Below are positions 6,955 through 60,441 of a stretch of 64,000 nt of DNA, piece by piece. The notes under the pieces were generated by a model, which had not been told where the DNA came from, ran no database searches, and saw nothing but the letters and a program-made list of their open reading frames with translations. Within the stretch, counting starts at the first letter, position 1. Every line of letters begins with the position of its first letter. The DNA is from Mustelus asterias. Lineage: Eukaryota. A program made the position numbers and the translations under genes. The DNA lies in NCBI RefSeq assembly GCF_964213995.1, contig NW_027590202.1:558001-622000 (forward strand), in the 5' to 3' direction.

Positions 6955-8636
6955 TTACTGAGAGAGACAAGAGATGAAATTGCTGGGCCTCTCACAAAAA
7001 TCTTTGTTTCTTCATTAGACACAGGTGAGGTCCCAGAGGATTGGACGATAGCAAATGTGGTCCCGTTATTTAAGAAGGGTAGCAAGGATAACCGGGTAAT
7101 TATAGGCCAGTGAGCTTGATGTCCGTGGTAGGAAAATTGGTGGAGAAGATTCTTAGAGATAGGATCTATACACAGTTAGAACTGAATAATCTCATTAGCG
7201 ATAGACAACATGGTTTTGTACGAGGGAGGTCATGCCTCACAAATTTGGTTGAGTTTTTTGAGGAGGTGACAAAAAGGACTGACGAGGGAAGGGCCGTGGA
7301 TGTCGTCTGCATGGATTTTAGTCAAGCATTTGACAAGGTCCCTCATGGCAGGCTGGTGCAAAAGGTTAAATCTCACGGGATCAAAGGTGAACTAGCTACA
7401 TGGATACAGAACTGGCTTGGCCATAGAAGTGGAGATGCGGGCGTTGGACTGGGGTAAGCACAGTAAGAAGTCTCACAACACCAGGTTAAAGTCCAACAGG
7501 TTTTTTTGGTAGCAAATACCATTTGCTACCAAATATACCTGTTGGACTTTAACCTGGTGTTGTGAGACTTCTTACTTGGCCATAGAAGACAGAGAGTAGC
7601 AGTGGAAGGGTCTTTTTCTGATTGGAGGTCTGTGACTAGTGGTGTTCCGCAGGGCTCTGTACTGGGACCTCTGCTGTTTGTGATATATATAAATAATTTG
7701 GAAGATGTAGATAGTCTGATTCGTAAGTTTGCGGATGACACAAAGATTGCTGGAGTTGCGGATAGTGATGAACATTGTCAGAGAATACAGCAGGATATAG
7801 ATAGGCTGGAAAATTGGGCAGAGAAATGGCAGATGGAATTTAATCCAGATAGATGAGAAGTGATGCATTTTGTAGATCTAATGCAGAGGGGAGCTATACA
7901 ATAAATGGCAGAACCATCAGGAGTATAGACACGCAGAGGGATCTGGGTGCGCAAGTCCACAGATCCTTAAAGGTGGCAGCACAGGTGGAAAAGGTGGTGA
8001 AGAAGGCACATGGCATGCTTGTCTTTATTGGGGCATAGAGTATAAAAGTTGGCATATGATGTTGCAGTTATATGGAATGTTGGTTAGGCCACATTTGGAA
8101 TACTGCGTCCAGTTCTGGTCGCCACACTACCAGAAGGACGTGGAAGCTTTGGAGAGAGTGCAGAAAAGGTTTACCAGGATGTTGCCTGGTATGGAGGGTA
8201 TTAGCTATGAGGAGAGATTGAGTAAACTAGGGTTGTTCTGCCTGGAAAGACGGAGTTTGAGGGGCGACCTAGTAGAAGTTTATAAAATTATGAAGGGCAT
8301 AGATAGGGCGAACAGTTGGAAGCTATTTCCCAGGTCAGAAATGACAAACACAAGGGGTCACAAGTTCAAGGTAAGGGGGGCAAGGTTCAATACAGATATG
8401 CGGGGGGACGTATTTTACACAGAGGGTGGTGGGGGCCTGGAATGCACTACCAAGCAAGGTGGTTGAGGCAGACACGCCAAGACCATTTAAGACTTATCTA
8501 GATAGCCGCATGAACAGACTGGGAATAGAGGGATACAAACGGATGGTCTAGTTAGGAATACATGATCGGTGCAGGCTTGGAGGGCCGAAGGGCCTGTTCC
8601 TGTGCTGTATTGTTCTTTGCTCTTTGTTCTTTTTTT
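6955..8636 (+). mobile_element. CR1 LINE RT region and 3' end, degenerate
   Basis: VPEDW, QHGF, DFSQAFDKVPH, GVPQGSVLGP, FADD and RPHLEYCVQFW across frameshifts, ending in a TTCTTTG tail. Confidence 0.95.
7430..7574. mobile_element. Penelope-derived foldback stub with 14-bp TSD
   Basis: Matches the termini of the element at 16078-18042. Inverted arms are 7462-7517 and 7521-7576. TSD CTTGGCCATAGAAG lies at 7416-7429 and 7575-7588. Confidence 0.9.
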
Positions 8637-8654
8637 GTGTCTATTTTTCCCCAC

Positions 8655-9140
8655 TATCTCTGCCGCTTCTCCCTTTATGCACCTGCTGTCTCTCCCCCCT
8701 CTTTCCGTGTACTACTATCTTTCTACCCCCTCTCTCTCTCTGCCCCTCTCACTCTACCCCAATCTCTATCCTTCCCACTCACTCTGCTCCATGATGTATC
8801 TGTCCCACGCTTTCACTGCCCCACCTTCTCTCTGTACCTCTCTCACTGCCCCACGCTGTCAGTGCACCTCTCTCTCTTCCCACTCTCCCTCTGCCCCCTC
8901 TCTTTCTCTCTCTCCTCATTCCCAGCGCCCTCTTTCTCTCACTGCACCTTCTCTCTATCTGCCTCCTTCTCTGCCCCCTTTCTCTTTCTCTGCAACCCTC
9001 CCTGCCCTCCCTTCCCCCTCTCTCGCACTGCCCCTCTCGCTCCACCTCACTCTCCCCTTCTTTCTCTCTCTCTCGGTGTCTGATCCTATTGCTTTATTTC
9101 TATGCTCGATATCTCTCCCTCCCTCCCTCTCTCTCGCTGA
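8655..9140. repeat. CT-rich low-complexity tract
   Basis: Pyrimidine-rich imperfect repeats. Confidence 0.9.
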
Positions 9141-9254
9141 GACTGATTCTGGAGCCGCATGACCCTCTTGTCCCCCTTCAAGCTGCATTCCCATTTTGAC
9201 TCCAAATTGACAATGCAACATTTAACTCTGAACCCCAGATGTTTATGGAGGTGC

Positions 9255-9395
9255 CCTCTGTGACCTCACTTCCCTTCAGTTACCTCGTGCCCTCTACGTG
9301 ACCTCACTTGTTCAGGTCACCCCCACCGCTGCACTGCGGGAATTGTAGAACCACTTTCCAAGACGGTGATGTTTGGATGATTGCTGTCCAATCAG
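9255..9395 (-). promoter_or_regulatory. Probable relic promoter (ZNF143/THAP11-type motif plus CCAAT)
   Basis: 9331-9348 reads CTACAATTCCCGCAGTGC on the minus strand. GTGACCTCACTT occurs twice and CCAATC lies at ~9388. Confidence 0.4.
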
Positions 9396-9514
9396 AATGA
9401 AGCAGTGGGATAATGGGCAGCTGGAAGGGTGAATCGGAGAGGTGATATATCATTGTCATTGTTTTGCTGTCAAGTCAGAACAAGGCAGGTGGATATTGGA
9501 CAGTTGACCTAGCC

Positions 9515-10682
9515 AATGCGAGGGTCCAATTAATGTAGTTTATATGGATTTTAGCAAAGCCTTTGACAAGGACCCACATGGGGGAACTGATTGACAAGTT
9601 TAAAGGACATGGAATTCAGGGAAACTTTGCAATGCAGATCCAAAACTGGCTTCGTAATCGTAAACAAAGTATCATCAAAGAAGGCTGCTTGAGTGGCTGA
9701 AGCTGGTGTCTAGTGGCGTGCCACAAAGATCAGTGCAGGGACACATATTGTTTGCTATCTACACAAATAATAAGATGATAATGTAGAGGAATGATAAGCA
9801 AGGTTGGTGGGGTGGTTAAGAGTAAAGAAAAAGGCTGTAGTTGCCAGGAAGATATAGATGGGTTGGTCAGATGGCAGAGCAGTGGCAGATGGTATTTAAT
9901 CCTGATAAGTGCGAGCTGATGCCCTTTGGGAGAAGTAACCAGACAAGGGAGTATTTAATGAATGGCAGGACATGAGGAGGCTCAGAGGAACAGAGGGTTC
10001 TTGGGGTAATTATTCATAGATCCGTCAAGGCCGCAGAGCAGTTGAATATGATATTTAGGAACGCATACAGACACTTGCTTTTAACAGTTTTGGCAGAGAG
10101 TAGAGGAGCAAGGATAATGTTGGAGCTGTACAGAACACTGGTTAGGCCACGGCAGGCATATTGCGTACAGTTCTGGTCATCTCACAATAGGAAGGATGTG
10201 ATTCCACTGGTACAGAGGATATTCACCACACTTTTGCATAGAATGGAGCATTTGAGCAATAACGGGAGACTGGATAGGCTTGGATTGTTATTTTGTTCTA
10301 GAACAGAGGTGGCCGAGGAGACATGATTGAGGTAAATAAGATTATGAGAGGTATGGACATGCTGAATGGGAAGCAGCTATTCCCCTTGGTTGTGGATGAA
10401 TCACAAGAGGCGTAGTTTTGGGGCAAGGAGCAGGGGATTCAGAGGGGATTTGAAAAAAAAAACTCAGTGGATGGTGAGAATCTGGAATGCACTGCCTGTG
10501 AAGGTAATGGAGGCAGGAAATCTTACAACCATTAAAAAGTATTTGGATGAGAACATGAAACATCATAACAGTCAAGGATATGGGACAAGTGCGAGAGCAT
10601 GTAAGTGATGCGACTTGAGTGGTAGTTATTGTGGGTGCAGACTTGATGGACCGATTCTGCTGTACGACTGTATGAATCTATG
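9515..10682 (+). mobile_element. Old CR1 RT and 3' fragment
   Basis: Degenerate DFSKAFDK and YCVQFW motifs, with a TATGAATCTATG tail. Confidence 0.85.
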
Positions 10683-10775
10683 GAGATCCTGTCCTGGCTG
10701 TACCCTCCCCTTTCAGGAAATGTAAATGAAAATGAAAACAAAAATCTGGAAACTCTCAGTGGTTCAGTTCTTCCC

Positions 10776-11662
10776 TTAATGACATTGAGTAAAGGGATAT
10801 TTCATCACATTCTTCAACTGCTCCCTGAACTTAGTCTGGGTGACCGCATAAATAAAGGTATTTGTGCAGCAACTCAGGAGCTGCAGCATGAAGCCCAAGT
10901 CCCGAACAAAAATCGCACTGTATGGAGATGGATACACCAACCAGGACATCTGGAAAGATAAAATATCAATCATTAACGTTGACCATAACAGGATGAAACT
11001 GGCTGAAATAACAAACAGTAAAATGATGGACTTCCTTCGACTTTCTATTTCTGGATCTCTGAGACTCTCCCCATTGCAGTGAGCCCGGAGTCTCCTGCGG
11101 GCTCTGCTCATCACTAAAATGTGTCTGGCGGTGAGAACATTGAGCAGCAGAATCAGAACAAATGGGATACATGGGGTTAGAATGTAATGGAGGAACACAA
11201 TTGCTCCCCAAACTGGAGAAAACAGGACATCAAATGAGTAATTACAAAACCAAGGGTCGTTCATTAATACATACTGACGTGTTACCATAAAATACCAGAA
11301 AATATTCTTTAAGCAGCTCAGCGCAGTCACTGTTCCCAAGGCCACAGATGCCGTTTTCTCGCTGCAATATTTATTTTTCAGCTTCTGGCAACAAATGGCC
11401 ACAAATCGATCAAAGGTGAAAGTGATGGTGAACCAGACAGAACAGTCAGTGGCTGCATAAAGCAGGACGGCGTGGATATTACACACGGGGATGAATTTCA
11501 GGAAATGAAACTGTTCATCAAAAACAATCGGAATGTGTCTCAATATCAGGTCGAGGATAATAACCAGTAGATCCGCCAATGACATGGCCACCAGGTAATG
11601 AGTGATACATCTGGAGAGACCACAGTTTTTGCAGATGAGGATCACAATGGTGACTAAATTCA
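10776..11662 (-). CDS. GPR139/GPR142-like class A GPCR, exon 2
   Basis: Open frame with LADL (TM2), TFDRFVAIC (DRY variant) and NTFIY (NPxxY variant). Acceptor CCTTACAG is phase 1. Confidence 0.92.
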
Positions 11663-13716
11663 CTGTAAGGAAGGGAAATAAACAATGAGATCATACATCA
11701 TGCTGCTGGCAAAATTACCAGTTTGATTGAGGGGTTATTGAGATGTGCTTCTGCATGCTGTAATGTATTAATGTAATCAGACCTGATAGAACAAATGGGC
11801 ACGTCTGTGACACAATGGAAGGAATCTTAGATGAAATAAAATCAGGGTGCGTGGAAAAATGGTGAGGCAGGAATGACACAGGGAGCCAGAGGTGATGGAG
11901 AGATTCTCGAGTGATAAGGGATCCTGGGGTTCGTGGTGGGATGCAGGATGGTGCAGAACTCAGGAGTGATGGGTGTTGGGGTGATTGGGAGGAGCCACGG
12001 GTGATGGGCCTGTTAGGGACAGAGGAGCAATGTTGACAATTTATGTGTTTTCCAAATGATTTGAAACGATTTTTAAATGATTTTGATTTGGACGTGAAAG
12101 AGACTCCAGCATGGTATCTTGTCTTCCTGGTGCCAGGGTCCAGGCAGTCTCTGAACGGGCAGAAAGTATTCTGAAGGGAGAGGGTGAACAGCCAGTGGTT
12201 GTGGTACACATTCGTACTGACAATATAGGTAGGAAGAGTGATGAGGTCCTGCAGCAGCAGTGTAGGGAGTTTAGTCGAAAGTTAAAAAGCAGCACCTCTC
12301 GGGTTGTAATCTCAGGATGACTCCTATGCCACGTGCCAGTGAGGCTAGAAATAGGAAGATAGTACAGCTCAACACGTGGCTGAACAGCTGGTGTAGGAGG
12401 TAAGGTTTCAGATATCTGGACCATTGGGATCGCTTCTGGGGCATGTGGGACCTCTACAAGAAGGATGGGGTGCATCTAAACTGGAAGGGTATAAATATTA
12501 TGGCCGGGAGGTTTGCTCATGTCACACGGGAGGATTTAAACTAGTTTGGCAGGGGAGTGGGAACCAAAGCAAAGGTGAATTAACTGAAGGGGAACCAGAG
12601 AGTAGGGCCACTAAGACTCAGAGAAAGGGCTGTCAGGGTGTGGTTGCTCATGAAAGACGTGACTGAAATGCATTTGTTTCAATGCAACAAGTGTAACAGT
12701 TAAAGCAGATGAACTTAGGGCTTGGATTAGTACTTGGAACTATGATGTTGTTGCTGTTACAGAGACTTGTTTAAGGGAAGGACAGGATTGGCAGCTTAAC
12801 GTTGAGCAGATAGATGTATCAGGCTGGTTCGAGGGAGACATCAAAGGGATGGAGCAGTTAAGGATTAAGGAGAAACTCACAGCTGTACGGTGGGAGGACA
12901 GCCCGGAGGCCCATACAGCGAGGCAATATGGGTAGAGCTCAGGAATAGGAAGGGTGTAGTCACAATGTTGGGGTTTACAATAGGGCGCCCAACAGCCAGC
13001 GGGAGATAGAAGAACAAATATGTAGGCAGAATTTGGCAAGGTGTCAAAGTAACATGGTTGTTGTGGTGGGAGGTTTTAACACACCCCATATTGACTGGGA
13101 CTCACTTAGTGCTAAGGGCGTGGATGGGGCAAGGTTTGTAAGCAGCATCCAGGAGGGCTCCTTGAAACAGTATGTAGAGAGTCCAACCAGGGAAGGGGCC
13201 GTACTGGACCTTGTATTGGGGAATGAGCCCGGCCAGCGAGTCGACGTTTCAGTGGGGGAAGAGTTCTGCAACAGTGACCACAATTCAGTAAGATTTAAGG
13301 TACTGATGGATAAAGATAAGTGTAGTCCTCAAGTGAAGGTGCTAAATTGGGGGAAGGCTAATTACAACAATATTAGGCAGAAACTGAAGAATGTAGATTG
13401 GGGGCAGATATTTGAGGGCAAACCAACTCTTGGCATGTGGGAGGCTTTCAAATGGAAGTTGATAGGGATTCAGGACTGGCACATTGCTGTAAGGATGAAC
13501 GATAAGAATGGTACGTTTTGGCAAATTTGGACAACGAGAGATATTGTGAGCCTATCCAACGAGAAAAAGCAAGCATTTGTCGAGGCTAGGAGGCTGGGAA
13601 GACACAAAGCAAGTGTGAATACAAGGAAAGTGGAACGAAACGTAAGCAAGGAGTAAGGGTTAAAAGGGAAAATCATTGGCCAGCAGGATTAAGGAAAATC
13701 CCAAGGCTTTTTATAC

Positions 13717-15328
13717 AAAGAACAAAGAACAATACAGCACAGGAACAGGCCCTTCGGCCCTCCAAGCCCGCGCCACTCCCCGGTCCAGGATTGAATCCTG
13801 AATCCAGGATCCCGGCCCAGTTTTCCAGCCTATCTACATCCTAATATCCTATCCAGCGAGCTGTCCCTCACAGCTACGATGCTTTGTTCATCACAACCTA
13901 TTAACTCACCCCCACCCCCCCATTCCAGACCATGTGATCTCCAGGGAGAGGCGAAAACCCAGAGTGAAAACCCCAGGGCCAATATGGGGAAAATAAAAAT
14001 CTGGGAAATTCCTCTCCGACACCCTGAGGCGATCGAAACGAGTCCAGGAGATCACACTGGCCCTGATCAGAAAATGCTTCCCAACCCTATTCATTTCCAC
14101 TTCTGCTTTACGAACACCATCTGAATTCCCTGCCCCCGAGACAGGTTCCCAACTATCCGCAGTCTCGCTCTGTACTGGCACCAGCAAGATGATCATAGAA
14201 TGAAGCCTTGAAACGAGAAACAAAGAACAATTCGCCCGCGCCGCTCCCTGGTCCAAACTAGACCACTCTTTTGTATCCCTCCATTCCCACTCCGTTCATA
14301 TAGCTGTCTAGATAAGTCTTAAACGTTCCCAGTGTGTCCGCCTCCACCACCTTGCCCGGCAACACATTCCAGGCCCCCACGACCCTCTGTGTAAAATATG
14401 TCCTTCTGATATCTGTGTTAAACCTCCCCCCCTTCACCTTGAACCTAAGACCCCTCGTGAACGTCACCACCGACCCGGGGAAAAGCTTCCCACCGTTCAC
14501 CCTATCTATGCCTTTCATAATTTTATACACCTCTATTAAGTCTCCCCTCATCCTCCGTCTTTCCAAGGAGAACAACCCCAGTTTCCCCAAGCTCTCCTCA
14601 TAACCAAGCCCCTCCATACCAGGCAACATCCTGGTAAACCTCCTCTGTACTCTCTCCCAGGCCTCCACGTCCTTCTGGTAGTGTGGCGACCAGAACTGGA
14701 CGCAGTATTCCAAATGCGACCGAACCAACGTTCTATACATCTGCAACATCAGACCCCAACTTTTATACTCTATGCCCCGTCCTATAAAGGCAAGCATGCC
14801 ATATGCCTTCTTCACCACCTTCTCCACCTGTGACGTCACCTTCAAAGATCTGTGGACTTGCACACCCAGGTCCCTCTGCGTCTCTACACCCTTTATGGTT
14901 CTTCCATTTATCGTGTAGCTCCTCCCTACATTATTCCCACCAAAATGCATCACTTCGCATTTATCAGGATTGAACTCCATCTGCCATTTCTTTGCCCAAA
15001 TTTCCAGCCTATCTATATCCTTCTGTAGCCTCTGACAATGTTCCTCACTATCTGCAAGTCCTGCCAGTTTTGTGTCGTCCGCAAACTTACTGATCACCCC
15101 AGTTACTCCTTCTTCCAGATCATTTATATAAATCACAAACAGCAGAGGTCCCAATACAGAGCCCTGCGGAACACCACTAGTCACAGGCCTCCAGCCGGAA
15201 AAAGACCCTTCCACTACCACCCTCTGTCTTCTATGACCAAGCCAGTTCTCCACCCATCTAGCCACCTCCCCCTTTATCCCATGAGATCCAACCTTTGTCA
15301 CTAGCCTACCATGAGGGACTTTGTCAAA
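13717..15328 (-). mobile_element. Young 5'-truncated CR1 with a long 3' UTR
   Basis: Uninterrupted RT C-terminal frame 14258-15328, a ~540-bp 3' UTR and a (TTCTTTG)n tail. ATAC is repeated at both junctions. Confidence 0.93.
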
Positions 15329-16136
15329 TACATATATAAAGAGCAAGAGGGTAGCAATGGAAAGGGTTGGCCCACTCAAGGACAGGGGAGGGAATCTGTG
15401 CGTGGAGCCAGAGGAAATGGGCGAGGTATTAAATGAGTACTCTGCATCAGCATTCACCAAAGAGAAGGACTTGGTGGATGATGAGTCTGGGAAAGGGTGT
15501 GCAGATAGTTTGAATAATTTTGAGATTAAAAAGGAGAAAGTATTGGGGTTCTTGGGAAATACTAAGGTAGGCAAGACCCCAGGGCCTAATGAGATTTACC
15601 CCTGAATATTGAGAAAGTCAAAGGAGAAAATTGCTGGGGCCTTGAAAGAAATCTTTGTATCCTCACTGGCTACCGAAGAGGTCCCAGACGATTGGAGAAT
15701 AGCCAATGTTGTTCCTTTGTTTGAGAAGGGTATGAAGATTCCAGGTAATTACAGGCCTGTGAGCCTTACGTCAGTGATCGGGAAATTATTGGAGAGGATT
15801 CTTCGAGACAGGATTTACTCCCACATGGAAATAAGTGGACGTATTAGCGAGAGACAACATAGTTTTGTGATGGGGCCGTCGTGTCTCATTAACTTCATCG
15901 AGTTTTTCGAGGAAGTGACGAAGATGATTGATGAGGGTAGGGCAGTGGATGTTGTGTACATGGACTTCAGTAAGGCCTTTGACAAAGTACCTCATGCCAG
16001 ACTTGTGCAGAAGGTGACGTCGCATGGGATCAGATGTGACCTGGCCAGGTGGATGCAGAACTGGCTCGTTCATAGAATACAGTAAGACGTCTCACAACAC
16101 CAGGTTAAAGTCCAACAGGTTTATTTGGTGGCAAAA

Positions 16137-16182
16137 GCCACTAGCTTTCGGAGTGCTCGCTGCTCTTTCGTCAGGTGAGTGG
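16137..16182 (-). ncRNA. Minimal type I hammerhead ribozyme motif
   Basis: CCACTCAC-CTGACGA-stem II-GAAA-GCTA-GTGG. Confidence 0.75.
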
Positions 16183-17900
16183 GAGATGTGTTCACAAACA
16201 GGGCATATAAAGATACAAACTCAATTTACAAAATAATGGTTGGAATGTGAGTCTTTACATGTAGTCAAGTCTCAAAGGTGCTGACAATGTGGATGGAGAG
16301 AGCGTTAAGCACAGGTTAAAGAGATGTGTATGTCTCCAGACAGGACAGTTAGTGAGATTTTGCAAGCCCAGGCAAGTCGTGGGGGTTACAGATAGTGTGA
16401 CATGAACCCAAGATCCCGGTTGAGGCCATCCTCATGCGTGCGGAACTTGGCTATCAGTTTCTGCTCAGCGACTCTACATTGTCGTGTGTCATTAAGGCCA
16501 CCTTGGAGAACGCTTACCCGAAGATCAGAGGCCGAATGCCCGTGACCGCTGAAGTGTTCCCCAACAGGAAGAGAACAGTCTTGCCCCTGGTGATTGTCGA
16601 GCGGTGTTCTTTCGTCTGTTGTCGCAGCGTCTGCATGGTTTCTCCAATGTACCATGCCTCAGGACATCCTTTCCTGCAGCGTATCACGTCGACGTTGGCC
16701 GAGTTGCAAGAGTATGGACCGTGTACCTGGTGGATGGTGTTCTCACGTGAGATGATGGCATCCGTGTCGATGATCCGGCATGTCTTGCAGAGGTTGCTGT
16801 GATCGGGTTCTGTGGTGTCGTGGTCACTGTTCTCCTGAAGGCTGGGTAGTTTGCTGCAGACAAAAGATCTGTTTGAGGTTGTGTGGCTGTTTGAAGGCAA
16901 GAAGTGGGGGTGTGGGATAGCCTTGGCGAGATGTTCATCTTCATCAATGATGTGTTGAAGGCTCTGCAGAAGATGGCGTAGCTTCTCCGCTCTGGGGAAG
17001 TACTGGATGATGGAGGATACTCTGTCCACCGTGTCCCGTGTTTGTCTTCTGAGGAGTCGGTGCGGTTTTTCGCTGTGGCGTGTCGGACCTGTCGGTTGAT
17101 GAGGTGAGCGCCATATCCTTTTCTTAAGAGGGCATCTTTCAGCCTCTGGAGGTGTCTGTTGCGATCCTCCTCATCAGAGCAGATTCTGTGTATACGGAGC
17201 GCTTGCCCATAGGGGATGGCTTCTTTAACGTGTTTAGGGTGGAAGCTGGAGAAGTGGAGCATCGTGAGGTTATCCGTGGGCTTGCAGTGTCATCATATAG
17301 TGGTTTCAATGATTGTTCACCATGAGTCCAAAGGAAGAAAATGTCATCGATGTATCGAGTGTATAGCGTTGGTTGCCCCCACGATGATGGCATCACTGAT
17401 ACGCTGCAGGAAAGGATGTTCCGAGGCATGGTACATTGGGGAGACCATACAGACGCTCCGACAATGGATGTATGAACACCGCTCGACAATCACCAGGCAA
17501 GAGTGTTCTCTTCCTGTTGGGGAACACTTCAGCGGTCACGGGCACTCGGCCTCTGATCTTCGGGTAAGCGTTCTCCAAGGCGGCCTTCACGACAACACAA
17601 CAACGCAGAGTCGCTGAGCAGAGACTGATAGCCAAGTTCCGCACACATGACGACGGCCTCAACCGGGATCGTGGGTTCATGTCACACTATCTGTAACCCC
17701 CACGACTTGCCTGGGCTTGCAAAATCTCACTAACTGTCCTGTCAGGACACAATGCACAAATCTTTAACGTGTGCTTAACGCTCTCTCCACTCACATTGTC
17801 TGAACCTTTGAGACTTGATTAGCTGTAAAGACTCGCATTCCAACCATTATTTTGTAAATTGAGTTGGTGTCTTTATATGCCCCGTTGGTGAACAGAATTT

Positions 17901-17946
17901 CCACTCACCTGATGAAGGAGCAGCGAGCGCTCCGAAAGCTGGTGGC
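17901..17946 (+). ncRNA. Minimal type I hammerhead motif with a mutated cleavage triplet
   Basis: CCACTCAC-CTGATGA-AGGAGCAGCGAGCGCTCC-GAAA-GCTG-GTGG. Confidence 0.75.
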
Positions 17947-20774
17947 TCTTGCTACCAAATAAACCTGTTGGACTTTAACCTGGTGTTGTGAGACTTCTTA
18001 ATGTGTTTAGCCCAGTCCAACACCGGCATCTCCACATCATGCCGGTCATAGAAGACAGAGGGTAGCAGTGGAAGTGTGCATTTCTGAATAGGGGGCTGTG
18101 ACAGGTGGCGTTCCTCAGGGATCAGTGCGAGACCTTTGCTGTTCGTAATATATATAAATGATTTGAATGAAAATGTAACTGGTTTGATTAGTAAGTTTGA
18201 AGACGACACAAACGTTAGTGGATATGCGAATAGTGATGAGGACCATCAGATGACAGAGTGGGATATACATCGGTTGGTGACTTGGGCAGAGAGATGGCAG
18301 ATGAAGTTTAACCTGGACAAATGTGAGGCAATGCATTTTGGCAGGTCCAATTCAGATAGTAAATATGCAATAAATGGCAGAACCGTTCAGAGAATTGATA
18401 AGCAGAGGGATCTGTGTATACAGGTACACAGGTTACTGAAAGTGGCAATGCAGGTGGAGAAAGGAGTCAAGAAGGCATACGGCATGCTTGTCTTCATCGG
18501 CTGGGGCATTGAGTTTAAAAATTGGCAAGTCGTGGTGCAGCTTTACAGAACCTTAGTTAGGCCGCACTTGGAATAGAGTATTCAAATCTTGTCACCACCC
18601 TACCAGAAGGATGTGGAGGCTTTTGAGAGGGTACAGAAAAGATTCATCAGCATGTTGCCTGGTATGGAGGGAGTCAGCTCTGAGGAGAGGTAGGAGAAAC
18701 TTGGTTTGCATTGGAACGATGGAGGTTGAGGGGTGACCTGATAAAGGATTATGAGGGGCATGGACAGAGTGGATAGTCAGAGGCTTCTTCCCAGCGTGGA
18801 AGAGTCAATTACTTGGGGGCACAGGTTTAAGGTGCGAAGAGCAAGGTTTAAAGGAGATGTATGAGGCACGTTCTTTACACAGAGGGTGGTGGGTGCCTGA
18901 AACTCGCTGCCAGGGGAGGTAGTGGAAGCAGATACGATAGTAGCTTTCAAGGGGCGTCTGGACAAATACATGAATAGGATGGGAATAGAGGGATATGGTA
19001 CCTGGAAGGGTAGGGGGCTTTCGTTCAGTCGGGCAGCATGGTCGATGCAGGCTTGGGGGGCCAAAGGGCCTGTTCCTGTGTTGTAATTTGCTTTGTTCTT
19101 TTTTCTTTTACTTATTCACTGCAATTAGATGCAATTGTGAGAAGAAGTATTTAAACCCATCAGGGGAGTGATTTTTGAGAACTGTCAAAAAACAGGCTTT
19201 CATAGGATAAACATTTATTGATTGCAAAACGTTGGAAATGGAACAATCACTTACTCCTGAAACCCACAGACACGCCCATAAGAAAAGCTGATTTCCATAA
19301 AATTAACATGCACTTAAATTATTAGAAATGCAGAACAGAAAAGATCACGGGGGCTATTGTTCAAAAACATTCTAAGCGTTAAATTCACTGCAAAACTGGA
19401 ACAAATCCTGCTGGTGTTTTCAGTGGGAGTTTCAAAACGAATCGCCAACACTCTGTGCACTCCAGAGAGCCCAAATGTGCTTCACGCTGAAATCAGTATT
19501 CCCACCAGAGAGGCCGCCAGCATGACCATCAGTAGGCCACTGCACGTGCATCGATCTGTCAGTGCTGATATCGGCCCACGTGAAGTGGCCTGCACTGCCA
19601 GCCTCCCGATCGCTGGCCAGCTCGATACTAAAAAATAGCAGTGCGGATACTGAAAATTTAGAATGAAAACAAAAAATGCAGGAAAAGCATAGGAGCTCTT
19701 GCAGCATCTGTGCAGAGTGAAACTGAGTTAACGTTTCAAATCAGTCTGACCTTATCCTTCTGGATGGAAGTGGTCGTGGGTTTGGAAGGTGCTGTGAAAG
19801 GATCTTTGTTGAATTGCTGCAATGCATCTTGTAGATGGTACACACGGCGGCTGCTGAGTTTATCCTCTTTTACCCATGCTTTTACTTGTCTGCTCTTTTT
19901 TTTGTATATGTGGAGGCGCTGCGCGTACGGAACATACTAAATGAACTGTATTGTCTTCCTCCTGTCCGTTTCCATGTTTATATATGGGGAAATCATCAAG
20001 CTGTACTGGACCAGGTTTGAGGGTGTTGCATTATTCGTAAAAATGCCAAAACTTCAATGAAAATATATTTTAAAAATAACATTCGAGGGACGTTCCTCGT
20101 GTTGCTGAACACATGCCCTGCTGAAAGTGACTAACACAGGCGTTCAGTGGACAGGTACAGACCAAGTTACAAAGAAATGTGTCACAGCTGTTAAAACATC
20201 CCCTCCAACATGGATACCACACCGGAGGCAGCGGGAAGTAAATATAAGAGCTTCCCACTTCATTCTCTTTCTTCTGAGCTTCTTTAAGCTGGCAACTTTG
20301 ACCATGTGGATGTAAATATCACAGACAGGTGGGAGAACGAAATTCATTTCATACAGGGAATTGGACAAATCCTGAAGGGGAAGGATTTGCAGGAATCTGG
20401 GGAATGGACAGAGGAACGGGATTAGTTGCAGCAGTAAAACCAAGAATGAGAATATTAGCACGGAGATGAAGGCTTATTCAACGGATGGGCTGGGCTGAGG
20501 CAGAAGTGGGGATGTCTGATATCATTGAGGTGTCTGAAGAAGTATTTGGGATGGAGAGAATATGGGGTTGGAAATCCAGTCAGGATCAAAGGGAGATTGT
20601 AGGTTGTGAGCAGCCTCTGATAGCAACCAAAGCGGTGCGTAGAGCAGCGGGATATGGAATGTAATGAGTGACTGGAGCTGAAGAGAATGAATTCATTCTT
20701 TCCAAAGTGTAAATAACCAGAAAAATAATGCAGTCTGACGCAGTTAGAATAAATAACTGGATAGAGAAACTTAC

Positions 20775-22424: not shown

Positions 22425-23145
22425 GTGAAAGCATCGTTTCTTGTGCTGTAGAGTCAAACATACCGTTCATAGTGTAAAGAGGGGAAAATGAAAAGGAGAG
22501 AGTGCAGAATATACAGTTACAGTCATACCTCGGGTGAAGAGAAAGATCAGATTAATAAAAGATAGGAAAATTCAAAAGACTGATGGCAGCAGGTAAGAAG
22601 CTGTTCCTGACTTGTTTGGTACGTATTTTCAGATTCTTGCACCTTTTTTTCCCGATGGAAGAGAGTATATCCGGGATACATGGGGAGCTTGATTATGCTG
22701 GCTGCTTTTCTGATGCAGCATGAAGCGTGGACGGAACCAATCATGGGAGGCTAGTTTGTGCAATGGACTTGGCTCCGTTCGCAACCTCTTGCAGCCTTGG
22801 TCAGAGCAGGAACCATACCAAGCTGCGATATATTCAGAACGGTTGCTTTCTATGGTGCATCTGTAAACAATGGAGAGAGTCGTAGTGGACAACCTGAATT
22901 TTCTCAGCTCCCTGAGAAAGTGGAGGCACTGGTGCGCTTTCCTAACTACACCGTCAGCACGGAGTGACCAGGGCAGGTTGTTGGTGATTCTAACATTTGG
23001 AAAATTGAATATCACCACCATCTCCACTTCATCACCGTTGATGTAAACAGGGACATGTTCTCCACTACGTTTCCTGACGTTGACGACTAGCTCCTTCGAT
23101 TTACTGACATTGAGGGAGAAATTATTGTCCTCGCCCCATTTCACA
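22425..23145 (-). mobile_element. Rex1/Babar-type LINE 3' fragment
   Basis: LNVSKSKELVV...KAHQCLHFLRELRKF...YRCTIES...WYGSC. Confidence 0.85.
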
Positions 23146-33946: not shown

Positions 33947-34104
33947 GTAACTATGACTCTCTTAGAAGGGTCTCACTAGAGAGTCATCTCTGGGTAGTTA
34001 CCTCTGTGAATGTTATTGGCGTGTTTTGGCATTCACAGTGAAGTTGTGCCTCCTCGCGGCCCCGTCGGTAACCTTGGTGGCTTGCCACCAAGGGCTAAAC
34101 AAGC
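33947..34104 (+). ncRNA. R2 retrotransposon 5' fragment: 28S target sequence plus HDV-like ribozyme
   Basis: GTAACTATGACTCTCTTA (the 28S R2 site), then the P3/L3 core GCC-TCCTCGC-GGC, P1 3' strand CCCGTC, GG, a P4 hairpin, GCTAA, and P2 TTGT/ACAA. Confidence 0.88.
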
Positions 34105-37917: not shown

Positions 37918-39558
37918 AGTCTGGACGCGCAATGATAAACGGCAGCATCAGTCAGGCTCAGATCAAATATACTTAAACTCATGAATTTGTACGAGGTCTG
38001 GAGGTAGACGTAGAGTCATGAAGTCATAGAGTTAACAGCATGGATCCAGGCCCTTCGGCCCAACTTGTCCATGCCGCCCTTTTTTTAAAAAATCCAAAGC
38101 TAGTCCCAATCGCCCGCATTTGACCCATATCCCTCTATACCCATCTTACCCATGTAACTGTCGAAATGCTTTTTAAAAGACAAAATTGTACCCGCTTCTA
38201 CCACTACCTCTGGCAGCTTGTTCCAGACACTCACCATCCTCTGTGTGAAAAAAACTGCCCCTCTGGACACTTTTGCATCTCTCCCCTCTCACCTTAAACC
38301 TATGCCCTCTAGTTTTAGACTCCCCTACCTTTGGGAAAATATATTGACTGTTTAGATGATCCATGCCCCTCATTATTTTATAGACCTCTATAAGATCACC
38401 CCTCAACCTTCTACGCTCCGGAGCAAGATTTCCCAGTCTATCCAGCCTCTCCTTATAACTCAAACCATCAAGTCTCGGTAGCATCCTAGTAAATCTTTCC
38501 TGCACTCTTTCTAGTTTAATAATGTCCTTTCTATAATAGGGTGTACAGAACTGTACACAGTATTCCAAGTGTAGCCTTACCAATGTCTTGTACAACTTCA
38601 ACAAGACGTCCCAACCCCTGTATTCAATGTTCTGAGCAATGAAACCAAGCACGCTGAATGTCTTCTTCACCACTCTGTCCACCTGTGGCTCCACTTTCAA
38701 GGAGCTATGAACCTGTACCTCTAGATCTCTTTGCTCTGTAACTCTTCTCAATGACCTACCATTAACTGAGTAAGTCCTGCCCTAGTTCAATTTACCAAAA
38801 TGCATAACCTCGCATTTATCTAAATTAAACTCCATCTGCCATTCGTGAGCCCGCTGGCCCAATTTATCAAGATCCCGTTGCAATCCGAGATAACCTTCTT
38901 CACTGTCCACTATGCCACCAATCTTCGTGTCAACTGGAAACTTCCTAAACATGCCTCCTTTTTTCTCACCCAAATCATTAATATAAATGACAAATAACAG
39001 TGGACCCAGCACTGATGCCTGAGGCACAACGCTGGTAACAGGCCCCCAGTTTAAAAAACAACCCTCTACAACGCCCTGTGGCTTCTGTCATCAAGCCAAT
39101 TTTGTATCCATTTTTAGCTACCTCCGACAGAGCGATATTAGCTACATAGAAGCGACTTTTAAAAACATCTGCTTTGTTTTCATAACTATCAGTATCTTTC
39201 CGCACTATAAACACGGGCTGCGTGTCTGGATGTTGTCGGTACCAGTGCAGCCGATAGTCGCTCTCTGCTCCTTAAAAGTGGAGTCACAGGTGGACAGAGT
39301 GGTGAAGAAGACATTCAGCGTGCTTGGTTTCATTGCTCCAGGTTAAAGTCACGATCTCGCCTTCTCTCTTAACATCTGATGTGAGCGGCTGGGTGACAGA
39401 ATCTCCATGTCTCAAATATGGAAATAACAACACAGAAAATGGTCAGAAGGGCGTATGATTAATTTGTGGTCTGGAACCAAGCTTGGGAAACGTGTGAAAC
39501 AGTGCAATGTTTTTTGCACGTAATTACCTGTCAGGAATGATCCCCACAGCAGCTGCAT
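37918..39558 (-). pseudogene. TCR alpha/delta-type V gene segment, disrupted
   Basis: Leader 39528-39558 (MQLLWGSFLT-G|GT), then GDSVTQPLTSDVKREGEIVTLT, DYRLHWYRQHPDTQPVFIV..SRF and LSLTDAAVYHCASR. The acceptor reads CAT, the first Cys is lost and a CR1 is inserted. Confidence 0.9.
38012..39125 (-). mobile_element. CR1 RT and 3' fragment inserted in the V exon
   Basis: ORFs 38173-38751 and 38782-39027, with a CTATGACT-type tail. Confidence 0.93.
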
Positions 39559-45741: not shown

Positions 45742-46226
45742 ATTAGTTTTATTTATTATTGTCACATGTATTAGTATACAGTGAAAAGCATTTTTTCTTG
45801 CGCGCTATACAGACAAAGCGTACTGTTCATAGAGAAGGAAACGGGAGCGCAGAATGTGGTATTACAGTCACTGTCAGGGTATAGACAAAGATCAACTTAA
45901 TGCAAGGTAATGTCCATTCAAAAGTATGATGGCAGCAGGGAAGAAGCTGTTCTTGAATCGGCTAGCACGTGACCTCAGACTTCTGTATCTTTCTCTCGAA
46001 GGAAGAAGATGGAAGAGAGAATGTCCGGGGTGCGTGGGGTCCTTAACAATGCTGGCTGCTTTGCCGAGGCAGCAGGAAGCGTAGACAGAATCAGTGGATG
46101 GGAGGCTGGTTTGAGTGATGGATTGGGCTCCATTCACGACTCTTTGTAGTTTATTGCGGTCTTGGGCAGAGCAGAAGCCATATCAAGCTGTGATACAACT
46201 TGAAAGAATGTTTTCTATGGTGCACC
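45742..46226 (-). mobile_element. Rex1/Babar-type LINE 3' end
   Basis: KAASIVKDPTHPGHSLFHLLPS..RFKNSFFP, homologous to 22425-23145. Confidence 0.88.
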
Positions 46227-59101: not shown

Positions 59102-60441
59102 AAAGCTCTGGAAAAGAATGGTTCAATCAAGCAGGTGCAGCATGGATTCATGAAGGGAAAGTCATGTTTGACTAATTTACTGGAATCTTTAGAGGATATA
59201 ACGAGTGCGGATGACAGAGGGGAACCGGTGGATGTGGTGTATTTAGATTTCTCGATGGCATTCGATAAGGTGCCTCACAAAAGGTTGCTGCATAAGATAA
59301 AGGCACACGGAGTTGAGGAGTGTTAGCGTGGATTGAGGATTGGCTATCTAAGAGAAAGCAGAGAGTCGGAATAAATGGGTGCTTTTTCAGTTGGCAATTA
59401 GTGACTAGTGGCGTGCCGCAGGGATCGGTGCTGGGGCCTCAACCATTTACCATATACATAGACGATCTGGAGGAGGGGACCGAGTGTAGGGTAACAAAGT
59501 TTGTGGATGACACAAAGATGAGTGGGAAAGCAAATTGCGTGGAGGACACAGAGAGTCTGCAGAGAGACTTGGATAGCCTAAGTGAGCGGGCACGGATCTG
59601 GCAGATGGAGTATGACGTTGGTAAGTGTGAGGGTATCTACTTTGAAAGGAATAGGAGTAAAATGGACTATTATTTAAACGGTGAAAAATTACAACATGCT
59701 ACTGTGCAGAGGGACCTGGGGCTCCTTGTGCATGAATCACAAAAACTCAGTTTGCAGGTGCAGCAGGTAATCACGAAGGCAAATGGAATGTTGGCCTTTA
59801 TCGCGAGAGGGATGGAGTATAAAAGCAGGGAGGTCTTGCTGCACCTGTACAGGGTACTGCTGAGGTCGCACCTCGAGTACTGTGTACAATTTTGGTCCCC
59901 TTATTTAAGAAAGGATATATTAGCTTTGGAGGGGGTACAGAGAAGGTTCACCAGGTTGACTCCGGAGATGAGGGGGTTAGCTTATGAGGAAAGATTGAGT
60001 GGACTGGGCCTGTACTCATTGGAGTTTAGAAGGTTGAGGAGAGATCTTATAGAGACATACAAGATAATAAAGGGGCTAGACAGGGTAGAAGCAGTGGGTT
60101 ATTTCAACTTACAATGGAAACAAGAACTCGGGGCATAGCCTCAAAATACGGGGGAGTCAATTTGGAACAGAGTTGAGGAGGAACTTCTTCTCCCAGAGGG
60201 TGGTGAATCTTTGGAAATCTCTGCCCAATGAAGCAGTGGAGACTACCTCGTTAAATGTGTTTAAGTCACAGATAAATAGATTTTTAACCACTAAGGGAAT
60301 TAGGGTTTTGGTGAGCGGGCGGGTAAGTGGAACTGACCCCACTATCAGATCAGCCATGATCTTATTGAATGGCGGAGCAGGCTTGAGGGGCTAGATGGCC
60401 TATTCCTGCTCCTATTTCTTATGTTCTTATGTTCTTATGTT
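59102..60441 (+). mobile_element. CR1 RT and 3' end with a 7-bp TSD
   Basis: ORFs 59069-60138 and a (TTCTTATG)n tail. CATCTGG lies at 59095-59101 and 60442-60448. Confidence 0.95.

What the first reader, a model, noticed from the sequence alone, without database searches (positions are those of the whole stretch)
7416..18053. Two independent Penelope insertions hit the same site of two different CR1 copies: a LINE-targeting Penelope?
Seen: both insertions of this Penelope family interrupt CR1 RT at the W-L-G-H-R|R-Q-R-V codons. Copy 1 has TSD CTTGGCCATAGAAG (7416-7429 and 7575-7588). Copy 2 has TSD CG(T/G)TCATAGAA (16067-16077 and 18043-18053). The boundaries agree within 1-2 nt. The host CR1s are visibly diverged, the inserts are 145 bp versus 1965 bp, and the complete terminus (...GGCATCTCCAC) is on the left in copy 1 but on the right in copy 2, which argues against one duplicated event. 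The homologous site in the young CR1 (~15222-15245) is empty. Known: GIY-YIG Penelope elements are generally regarded as having only loose target preference. Inference: sequence-specific targeting of an abundant LINE as a safe harbour, entered from either strand. The sample is only two events.
Basis: partly seen in the sequence, partly recalled or inferred. Interest (0 to 1): 0.82.

Follow-up and report, generated by a model that had tools for sequence, protein, structure and literature searches.

The report
Penelope insertion hot spot in CR1
A shark Penelope-like retroelement has landed independently, again and again, at one particular codon of the reverse-transcriptase gene of CR1 LINEs, which points to a real sequence preference of its nuclease, although most of its copies lie elsewhere.

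Summary
Two inserts of one Penelope-like element (PLE) family, 145 bp and 1965 bp, split two CR1 reverse-transcriptase copies at the W-L-G-H-R|R codons. Both are flanked by target-site duplications.

They are separate events:
- The host CR1s differ by K2P 0.31.
- Host A groups with an empty CR1 rather than with host B.
- The PLE arms differ by only 0.02-0.095.

The site recurs outside this window. Contigs of three public runs join PLE ends to CR1 at this nick. Four short ENA open reading frames run from CR1 '...NWLSHRS' straight into the PLE tail peptide, in different CR1 variants and with two different tail starts. First readers noted the same CR1 site in at least six other windows of this genome; I could not check those notes.

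The element is not a dedicated LINE-targeter:
- Only 1 of 16 sampled tail-bearing flanks is this site.
- 800 contigs of one run carry other flanks.

My reading is a moderately sequence-specific GIY-YIG nuclease, possibly a dimer. It nicks both strands about 12-14 nt apart at a quasi-palindromic CTGGCTT-N8-AAGACAG site that CR1 conserves and multiplies. The fold-back shape and one-sided 'tail' are standard PLE anatomy. Safe-harbour adaptation is not shown.

The parts
6960..7429 (+). Host CR1 copy A, the RT part upstream of the insertion. It ends ...AACTGGCTTGGCCATAGAAG.
   Evidence: tblastn of CR1 RT fragments P0053 and P0049 onto 7119-7436.
7416..7429 (.). Left copy of the target-site duplication of copy 1 (CTTGGCCATAGAAG).
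   Evidence: Identical to 7575-7588. The first two letters, CT, could also be read as PLE sequence at the right junction, so the duplication is 12-14 nt.
7430..7516 (-). Copy 1, arm carrying the complete terminus (the tail lies at about 7430-7461).
   Evidence: 93% identical to 17949-18034 of copy 2. Alignment of the four arm ends.
7517..7574 (+). Copy 1, tail-less arm ending ...GAGACTTCTTA. With the arm before it, it forms a 145-bp fold-back.
   Evidence: 98% identical to 17949-18000. Arms 96% alike. Inverted self-match.
7575..7588 (.). Right copy of the target-site duplication of copy 1.
7589..8400 (+). Host CR1 copy A, downstream of the insertion.
14409..15329 (-). Younger CR1 copy, 5'-truncated, with the target site empty at 15224-15245. 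The nick position lies between 15228 and 15229.
   Evidence: 84% identical to host A. Alignment. 0-mismatch pattern match. Joints of public contigs end at 15228.
15611..16077 (+). Host CR1 copy B, upstream part. CR1 ORF2-like sequence continues back to about 15330.
   Evidence: 74% identical to host A.. tblastn.
16067..16077 (.). Left copy of the target-site duplication of copy 2 (cgttcatagaa). Its limits are ambiguous.
16078..17396 (-). Copy 2, long inverted arm without the tail. It carries the C-terminal RT part (YIDD at 17354-17343), the linker, the GIY-YIG nuclease and the 3' untranslated part.
   Evidence: ORFs. Inverted repeats. Homologues from sharks, with Pfam PF01541 on P0023 and PF00078 on P0029. 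tblastn map.
16142..16181 (-). Hammerhead-like core (CTGACGA ... GAAA) in the left arm.
   Evidence: Seen in the sequence. Not reported by Rfam.
17397..18042 (+). Copy 2, short direct arm with the complete terminus (tail 18001-18042).
   Evidence: 610-bp inverted repeat with the left arm, 91%.
17900..17945 (+). Hammerhead-like core (CTGATGA at 17909-17915, GAAA at 17934-17937) in the right arm.
   Evidence: Seen in the sequence. No hammerhead family in Rfam at E up to 10. Most public contigs lack 4 nt at 17922 (table 4).
18043..18053 (.). Right copy of the target-site duplication of copy 2 (cggtcatagaa).
18054..18851 (+). Host CR1 copy B, downstream part.

Best explanation
One family of endonuclease-bearing Penelope-like elements of a shark genome inserted twice, independently, at the same place in two old, diverged CR1 LINE copies.

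Proposed mechanism:
- The element's GIY-YIG nuclease nicks both DNA strands about 12-14 nt apart.
- Each 3' end primes reverse transcription on element RNA at one of two nearby internal start sites.
- One arm therefore carries a 32-42-nt 'tail' and the other does not, and the two cDNAs meet head to head as a fold-back. In copy 1 both arms are about 55-85 nt. In copy 2 they are 1.3 kb and 0.65 kb.

Why this site: the nuclease has a real but moderate sequence preference. The CR1 codons N-W-L-G-H-R-R-Q offer a near-palindromic site, CTGG^CTT-N8-AAG^ACAG. Selection on the LINE's RT keeps this site and the LINE multiplies it, so it becomes a recurrent hot spot. It takes a few per cent of insertions, not all of them.

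Shown: the anatomy, the duplications, independence of the two events, and recurrence at the same nick in other data.

Inferred: nicking by a symmetric dimer, the extent of the recognised motif, and that the preference lies in the protein.
For: Independence of the two events:
- K2P between hosts A and B is 0.31 over 900 sites. A versus the empty young copy is 0.17.
- Three-taxon sites: A+young 153, A+B 68, B+young 43. With a fourth copy as outgroup: 36, 10 and 10.
- The PLE parts differ by only K2P 0.02-0.095.
- The tail is on opposite sides in the two copies.

Recurrence in public contigs:
- A joint from the PLE tail end (18041) to 15228 of the young CR1, exactly the nick position, stands in runs X15 (depth 1811) and X1 (depth 370).
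- The tail-less end (18000) is joined to the CR1 duplication at 18043 in X15 (4 contigs), X1 (1) and X4 (1).
- A variant has CTTAGC+CATAGAAG.

Recurrence in proteins:
- Of 17 representatives found with the window ORF 17955-18209(-), 16 carry the tail peptide.
- 1 of those 16 (P0042) reads CR1 sense '...NWLSHRS' directly into it.
- A search seeded with P0042 gave 8 proteins. Three more (P0049, P0050, P0051) break at the same codon, in other CR1 variants and with two different tail starts.

Symmetry of the site:
- The 7 outer positions on each side of the two nicks are complementary at 6 of 7.
- Only 125 of 63978 22-mers of the window do as well.

Published anatomy and mechanism:
- An inverted truncated copy and a 30-40-bp tail at one end are standard (PMC8557442, passages).
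- Cleavage and extension of both strands, two RT start sites that bound the tail, and a predicted dimer are reported for a lizard PLE (PMC11167929, section 3).
Against: - Most insertions are elsewhere. 15 of 16 sampled tail flanks are not this site. 800 contigs of X15 leave the tail-less end at 18000 into unlike sequence, with agreement 0.36.
- The non-CR1 flanks do not show the full palindrome. They show only a weak positional signal: Gly or Trp at -6 or -7 in 8 of 15 flanks. The single-position p of 0.005 does not survive correction for 12 positions.
- The published lizard PLE prefers AT-rich ATT sites, not a site like this one (PMC11167929).
- Contig depths are sums of word depths and give no copy numbers.
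- The protein sample is small, comes from unnamed ENA and JGI contigs, possibly of other species, and favours flanks with open frames.
- The copy 2 duplication limits are ambiguous, so 'same stagger' is not exact.
- The palindrome was noticed after the fact.
Confidence: 0.7

Rival explanations
1. Dedicated LINE-targeting. The family has evolved to recognise this CR1 sequence as a safe harbour, as R2 does with 28S rDNA.
For: - Both copies in the window (2 of 2) are at the site.
- The site recurs in contigs of three runs and in four ENA reading frames.
- At least six unchecked first-reader notes describe the same thing in other windows.
Against: - Only 1 of 16 tail flanks is at the site.
- 800 contigs carry other flanks.
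- There are insertions at another CR1 codon (P0054) and in another repeat (P0052).
- A first-reader note reports recurrent hits at a zinc-finger gene splice acceptor (unchecked).
- 3 of 5 CR1 sites in the window are empty, including the best match to the motif.
Confidence: 0.15
2. One composite event. A single CR1 copy received the PLE, and the composite was later duplicated, retrotransposed by CR1, or spread by gene conversion. Internal deletion of the palindrome would give the 145-bp form.
For: - Same site and similar duplication length.
- Inverted repeats are prone to deletion.
- The high word depth of the junction contigs (1811 in X15) could partly reflect amplified composites elsewhere in the genome.
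Against: - The hosts differ by K2P 0.31, while the inserts differ by 0.02-0.095.
- Host A is closer to an empty copy than to host B.
- The tail is on opposite sides, and each tail-less end abuts the duplication directly. This would need two separate deletions ending exactly at the insert borders.
- P0042 and P0050 share a CR1 variant but differ in tail start.
Confidence: 0.04
3. Coincidence. The family inserts nearly at random, and two hits at one CR1 position fell together by chance in a genome full of both repeats.
For: Both families are very abundant (summed word depths in the millions). The finding was picked from many windows.
Against: - About 4e-4 per insertion from the window's own numbers (my arithmetic).
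- An independent sample again gives 1 of 16 at the very same codon.
- Junctions at the same nick stand in three runs.
Confidence: 0.02
4. RNA-guided or microhomology-driven choice. The site is selected because the nicked DNA end pairs with the element RNA near the start sites, not because the protein reads the DNA.
For: - The tail-less junctions show 2-4 nt shared by target and element: CT in copy 1, ACAG/CTGT in copy 2.
- The element carries CTGTGCTT next to its inner start site, which resembles the half-site CTGT^CTT.
Against: - The tail junctions show no shared letters (GAAG|TGGAG).
- 2-4 nt of overlap is weak evidence.
Confidence: 0.09

Closest known systems
Canonical endonuclease-bearing Penelope-like elements (Penelope/Poseidon, Neptune clades)
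   Same: - C-terminal GIY-YIG nuclease after the RT.
- Heavy 5' truncation.
- An inverted truncated copy forming inverted repeats.
- A 30-40-bp tail at one end only.
- A hammerhead-like core near the end.
- Target-site duplications (PMC8557442 passages, PMC3846280 passages).
   Different: Published target preferences are moderate or AT-rich, or favour microsatellites. A recurrent hit at one codon of a LINE was not found in the papers I searched. The clade of this family was not determined.
PAc, the Poseidon element of Anolis carolinensis studied in vitro (PMC11167929)
   Same: Both strands are cleaved and extended. Two adjacent internal RT start sites bound the tail. A dimer is predicted. This explains fold-backs with the tail on either side.
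   Different: PAc prefers a 5'-ATT-3' context in AT-rich DNA. Here the recurrent site is CTGG^CTT...AAG^ACAG inside a coding LINE sequence. Nothing was assayed here.
PLE-X families of spike mosses that insert at one position of 28S rDNA (PMC8557442)
   Same: A Penelope-like element with a precise, recurrent insertion position in a multicopy conserved sequence.
   Different: Those families lack the GIY-YIG nuclease and appear restricted to the rDNA site. This family has the nuclease and inserts mostly elsewhere.
Site-specific non-LTR elements such as R2 in 28S rDNA and Tx1L in the Tx1D transposon of Xenopus
   Same: A retroelement using a fixed sequence inside another multicopy element or gene.
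   Different: Those elements are close to exclusive for their target and use a different nuclease. Here the site takes a minority of insertions.

Membership tests
Penelope-like element, endonuclease-bearing | GIY-YIG nuclease domain C-terminal to the reverse transcriptase in one reading frame | tested here: met
   - Minus-strand frames of 16386-17366 give YIDD, then a linker with CKTC, then ...VIRCRKGCPEAWYIGET....
- Shark homologues carry precomputed Pfam PF01541 (P0023) and PF00078 (P0029). They align to 16389-17366.
- The window copy is broken by frameshifts.
- There was no match to solved structures by sequence.
Penelope-like element, endonuclease-bearing | Inverted 5'-truncated copy and a 30-40-bp tail at one end only | tested here: met
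   Inverted arms of 610 bp in copy 2 and about 55 bp in copy 1. The tail is 32 nt in copy 1 and 42 nt in copy 2, on one side only. This matches the description in PMC8557442.
Penelope-like element, endonuclease-bearing | Hammerhead ribozyme in the terminal repeat | tested here: inconclusive
   A CTGATGA...GAAA core with a 5-bp helix II is visible at 17909-17937 and on the minus strand at 16174-16146. Rfam reported no hammerhead family at E up to 1 over 7000-19000, or up to 10 over 17860-18045.
Penelope-like element, endonuclease-bearing | Telomerase-like RT phylogeny | not tested
   Only the C-terminal part of the RT is present. No tree was built.
CR1-type LINE (the host) | Non-LTR reverse transcriptase reading frame | tested here: met
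   The RT motifs ...FDKVPHGRL... and ...FADDTK... align among five copies. P0053 carries Pfam PF00078 and matches 7119-7427.
CR1-type LINE (the host) | 3' end without poly(A), ending in a short tandem repeat | tested here: inconclusive
   Downstream of the young copy the sequence runs ...GTGCTGTATTGTTCTTTGTTCTTTG with no A run. This fits CR1-type ends as I recall them. Clade assignment (CR1 against L2 or Rex1) was not tested by phylogeny.
Site-specific retroelement (R2-like sense: nearly all copies in one target) | Large majority of insertions at the one target | tested here: not met
   1 of 16 tail flanks is at the site. 800 contigs in X15 have other flanks.

The most novel reading that the evidence does not exclude
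This shark family may be the first endonuclease-bearing Penelope-like element with a defined, extended recognition site of about 22 bp with dyad symmetry. A dimeric GIY-YIG/RT particle would cut it on both strands with a fixed 12-14-nt stagger.

The CR1 RT codon would be its optimal natural target, and the dispersed insertions would be relaxed off-target events. That would give a natural handle on how PLE nucleases read DNA, and a candidate for sequence-directed RNA-templated insertion.
Probability: 0.3. Interest if true: 0.8.

Novelty: new variant of a known kind. Interest (0 to 1): 0.55.

Why it matters
How Penelope-like elements choose targets is poorly understood. The papers I read report only 'moderate' preference, AT-rich or microsatellite bias, and one rDNA-specific family without a nuclease.

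A natural, recurrent, base-precise hot spot gives three things:
- a concrete DNA substrate for nicking and priming assays;
- a way to test the two-strand, two-start-site model on hundreds of genomic events;
- a marker for dating PLE activity against CR1 subfamilies in sharks.

It also warns annotators that CR1 copies split at this codon are a systematic feature of the genome and not an assembly error.

Tried and rejected
Approaches that gave nothing:
- An exact 27-nt PLE pattern found nothing in metagenome contigs or viral contigs.
- A degenerate protein-pattern scan of metagenome contigs matched 203 stretches, but none passed tblastn.
- The only raw-read run offered (X20) is another organism. 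Only 33 reads were laid, so it gave no copy numbers.
- Much was cut. 1389 joints, 444 between-letters rows and 8894 loose ends were not shown, so I could not tabulate all CR1-PLE joints or the orientation ratio.
- The word-based protein search with the junction ORF gave only 2 of 4 candidates.
- Rfam did not confirm a hammerhead.
- The PDB sequence search gave nothing.

Readings I considered and rejected:
- A single duplicated composite.
- Chance.
- Reading the 'CT' that begins the loose-end consensus at 18000 as target sequence. It is more simply the element's own next letters.

Limits on what I can claim:
- The Gly/Trp signal in flanks is kept only as a lead.
- Supplementary files of the papers were closed. 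Fig. S1B and S2 of PMC11167929 (genomic homing sites) and supplementary fig. S5 of PMC8557442 may bear on target preferences, and I did not see them.
- That a LINE-codon hot spot of a PLE is not in print rests on the listings, and on passages or sections of three papers (PMC8557442, PMC11167929, PMC3846280). Subscription journals are not covered.


Full report
**What is there**

The window holds only two places with this Penelope-like (PLE) family, at 7430-7574 and 16078-18042 (blastn of both inserts against the window). Both lie inside CR1-type LINE reverse-transcriptase sequence.

Copy 1 is a 145-bp fold-back.
- One arm (7430-7516, minus sense) ends with the long terminus ...CTTCTTACTGTGCTTACCCCAGTCCAACGCCCGCATCTCCA.
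- The other arm (7517-7574) stops at ...GAGACTTCTTA.
- The insert is flanked by a perfect 14-nt duplication, CTTGGCCATAGAAG.

Copy 2 is 1965 bp.
- A 1.32-kb minus-sense arm (16078-17396) carries the RT C-terminus (YIDD), a linker, the GIY-YIG nuclease and the 3' untranslated part. It lacks the last 35-40 nt.
- A 0.65-kb plus-sense arm (17397-18042) carries the full terminus.
- The arms share a 610-bp inverted repeat at 91% identity.
- Its duplication is cgttcatagaa / cggtcatagaa.

**Check of the observation**

Both inserts break the CR1 frame at TGG CTT GGC CAT AGA AG|A CAG.

One caveat concerns copy 2. On the left, ACAG can be read as CR1 or as the PLE end. On the right, CGG can be read as target or as the end of a small hairpin in the tail. 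The duplication is therefore 8-14 nt, and its left limit agrees with copy 1 only to within 0-5 nt.

Five CR1 copies in the window cover the site: host A, host B, a younger copy at 14409-15329(-), and two old ones at 38359-39111(-) and 59258-59519(+). Two of the five are occupied. The younger copy is the only perfect match to CTGGCTT-N8-AAGACAG, and it is empty.

**Independent events**

Over about 900 aligned sites:
- hosts A and B differ by K2P 0.31;
- A and the empty young copy differ by 0.17;
- B and the young copy differ by 0.36.

Three-taxon site patterns give A+young 153, A+B 68 and B+young 43. With a fourth copy as outgroup the informative sites are 36, 10 and 10. Host A is thus closer to an unoccupied CR1 than to host B.

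The PLE parts differ by only K2P 0.02-0.095, within and between copies. The inserts are therefore far younger than the split of their hosts.

The tail is on opposite sides, and each tail-less end abuts the duplication directly. A single composite ancestor is excluded for these two copies.

**Recurrence elsewhere**

*Public contigs.* I laid four runs on 14400-18900. The raw-read run was another organism (33 reads) and is useless. The three contig runs, labelled as three different organisms, gave the following.
- A joint from the tail end (18041) to 15228 of the young CR1, with one letter between, stands in X15 (depth 1811) and X1 (depth 370). Position 15228|15229 is exactly GAAG|ACAG on the CR1 sense strand.
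- The table does not state the strand of this joint. Read on the same strand, it reproduces the left junction of copy 1. Read on opposite strands, it would be a junction without the duplication, which I think less likely.
- The tail-less end (18000) is joined to the CR1 duplication at 18043, with CT between, in X15 (4 contigs), X1 (1) and X4 (1). A variant has CTTAGC+CATAGAAG.
- These depths are summed word depths, not copy numbers.
- Most rows of the tables were not shown.

*Protein collections.* The window ORF 17955-18209(-) is CR1 antisense followed by the tail read as HDVEMPVLDWAKHIKKSHNTRLKSNRFIW. Searched against 1.84 billion representatives, it gave 17 hits.
- 16 carry the tail peptide.
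- One of them (P0039) is CR1 antisense with the site uninterrupted.
- Of the 16, one (P0042) reads MDFSKTFDKVPHGRL...NWLSHRS directly into the tail. That is sense CR1 RT broken at the same codon, which the query could not have favoured.

A search seeded with P0042 is biased towards such junctions. It gave 8 proteins:
- P0042 itself;
- P0049 (...WIQNWLSHRS|HDVEM);
- P0050 and P0051 (...NWLSHRS|GDAGVGLG, the form of copy 1);
- P0053, an empty site in another CR1 variant;
- P0055, which ends before the site;
- P0054, with the tail after ...MHFGRLNQ, a different CR1 codon;
- P0052, with the tail after an unrelated repeat.

P0042 and P0050 share a CR1 variant but differ in where the tail starts. 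They too are separate events.

*Earlier notes.* First readers of this scan noted the same CR1 site in at least six other windows of this genome. I could not see those windows, so these notes remain leads.

**How specific is it**

It is not exclusive.
- 15 of the 16 sampled tail flanks are not this site.
- In X15, 800 contigs leave the tail-less end at 18000 into sequence that agrees only 0.36 with its own consensus.
- Taking about 25 as the depth of single-locus contigs of X15 (table 8), and one copy per loose-end contig, the displayed CR1 joints at that end amount to a few per cent. This is a rough figure resting on assumptions I cannot check.
- The protein sample has biases in both directions. 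Open CR1 frames are more likely to be called as genes. Clustering at 50% merges similar CR1 flanks.

**The target**

In copy 1 the top strand is nicked at CATAGAAG^ACAG and primes the tail-bearing cDNA. The bottom strand is nicked at GGCCAAG^CCAG and primes the tail-less cDNA.

The site therefore reads CTGG^CTT-N8-AAG^ACAG. Six of the 7 outer positions are symmetric, and only 125 of 63978 22-mers of the window do as well. I noticed this symmetry after the fact.

In copy 2 the roles of the two nicks are swapped.

Two further sites can be read at DNA level from homologous empty copies in the window:
- P0052's flank family at 46021-46140 gives ...ATTGGGC TCCATTCACGAC|;
- P0054's CR1 codon gives ...TTTTGG TARATTGAACCAG|.

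Both have TGG about 13 nt before the tail junction, as CR1 has ACTGGC.

Among the 15 non-CR1 flanks, Gly or Trp (GGN, TGG) stands at -6 or -7 from the VEM anchor in 8 of them. The single-position p is 0.005 and is not corrected for the 12 positions tested.

**How it most likely works**

The anatomy is that of ordinary PLEs. An inverted 5'-truncated copy and a 30-40-bp tail at one end are described as typical (PMC8557442, passages; PMC3846280, passages).

For the lizard element PAc, purified protein cleaves and extends both strands. Reverse transcription starts at two adjacent internal sites whose distance is the tail, and a dimer is predicted (PMC11167929, section 3 read in full).

Applied here: two nicks 12-14 nt apart, two primings, and two cDNAs meeting head to head, with the tail falling on either side.

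The new element is the site. I take it as the best natural match to a moderate sequence preference of this family's nuclease. It is made frequent because CR1 conserves these codons and exists in very many copies.

- Shown: duplications, junctions, independence of the events, recurrence.
- Inferred: the dimer, the length of the recognised motif, and recognition by protein rather than by RNA pairing. The tail-less junctions share 2-4 nt with the element, so a role for pairing is not excluded.

**Comparison with what is known**

This is a canonical endonuclease-bearing PLE by domain content and insertion anatomy.
- The hammerhead core is visible, but Rfam did not recognise it.
- The PLE clade was not determined.
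- The host is a CR1-type LINE by its RT and by a 3' end without poly(A). Its clade was not tested by phylogeny.

Known PLE target biases in the papers I read:
- AT-rich ATT (PAc);
- 'moderate' preference (D. virilis Penelope);
- (TA)n, (CA)n and (C)n microsatellites (Naiad, Chlamys, Neptune);
- one position of 28S rDNA for nuclease-less PLE-X families.

One PLE inside a non-LTR element is mentioned for a rotifer, without any claim of preference (PMC3846280).

Four full-text searches listed no paper describing a recurrent PLE hit at a LINE codon. Supplements were closed and subscription journals are not covered.

**Verdict**

The site is a genuine hot spot seen in several data sets.

'LINE-targeting safe harbour' overstates it, because the site takes a minority of insertions. 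I rate it a new variant of a known kind.

It is of moderate to good interest for people working on retroelement targeting, because it offers a defined substrate for a poorly understood nuclease.

The decisive genome-wide count could not be run.

Noticed in passing
window 46021-46140 and 22667-22851: These are copies of another repeat family. Its translation matches the flank of P0052, an ENA reading frame in which the same PLE tail follows ...DGLGYIHD.

The window copies are uninterrupted and read ...ATTGGGCTCCATTCACGAC|TCTTTG, with TGG about 13 nt before the homologous junction.
   Followed up: partly
window 7870-7886, 14927-14945(-), 18340-18357, 38785-38800(-): A second CR1 RT position (...EVMHFGRLNQ|) is occupied by the PLE tail in P0054. 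It is empty in all four CR1 copies of the window that cover it.
   Followed up: partly
window 18023-18045: CCGGCAT-CTCCACAT-CATGCCGG forms a 7-bp hairpin that spans the end of the copy 2 tail and the first three letters of the presumed duplication. It may correspond to the stem-loop in which reverse transcription starts in the lizard PLE. It makes the right border of copy 2 ambiguous.
   Followed up: partly
window 7500-7530: The apex of the copy 1 fold-back lies within about 2-6 nt of where a hammerhead of this family would cut (GAAAGCTA|GTGGC in the copy 2 left arm). Both short arms may be run-off cDNAs of ribozyme-cleaved RNA.

Public contigs show other, shorter apex positions, so this is not general.
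   Followed up: partly
window 17922: Most public contigs lack 4 nt here, inside helix II of the hammerhead-like core (depth with the gap is 1.05 of 1.53 million in X15). Copy 2 therefore carries a private insertion relative to the family (table 4).
   Followed up: no
window 16103-16129 joined to 17901-17971: Many public contigs join the two arms at these positions, skipping 1776-1861 nt. These are short fold-backs like copy 1, and they appear to be the commonest form of the family. The best supported is 16103 to 17901 with TTTC between, at depth 4619 in X15.
   Followed up: no
window 13715-13800 and 14215-14260 (minus strand): Two CR1-type 3' ends (...GGACCRGGGAGYGGCGCGGGC...) lie about 450 bp apart. 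The downstream one ends in GTTCTTTGTTCTTTG without poly(A), and the upstream one appears truncated or interrupted.
   Followed up: no
window 33947-34104: A first-reader note on this window reports an orphan R2-type HDV-like ribozyme with its 28S target sequence outside rDNA. I did not look at it.
   Followed up: no
proteins P0031-P0048 (not in the window): The tail peptides fall into two groups. One stops after ...NRFIW, as in the window. The other reads on as ...NRFI(W/L)NHELSE.CSF(V/I)K. This suggests two PLE subfamilies. The four CR1-site junctions whose group can be read belong to the first group.
   Followed up: no
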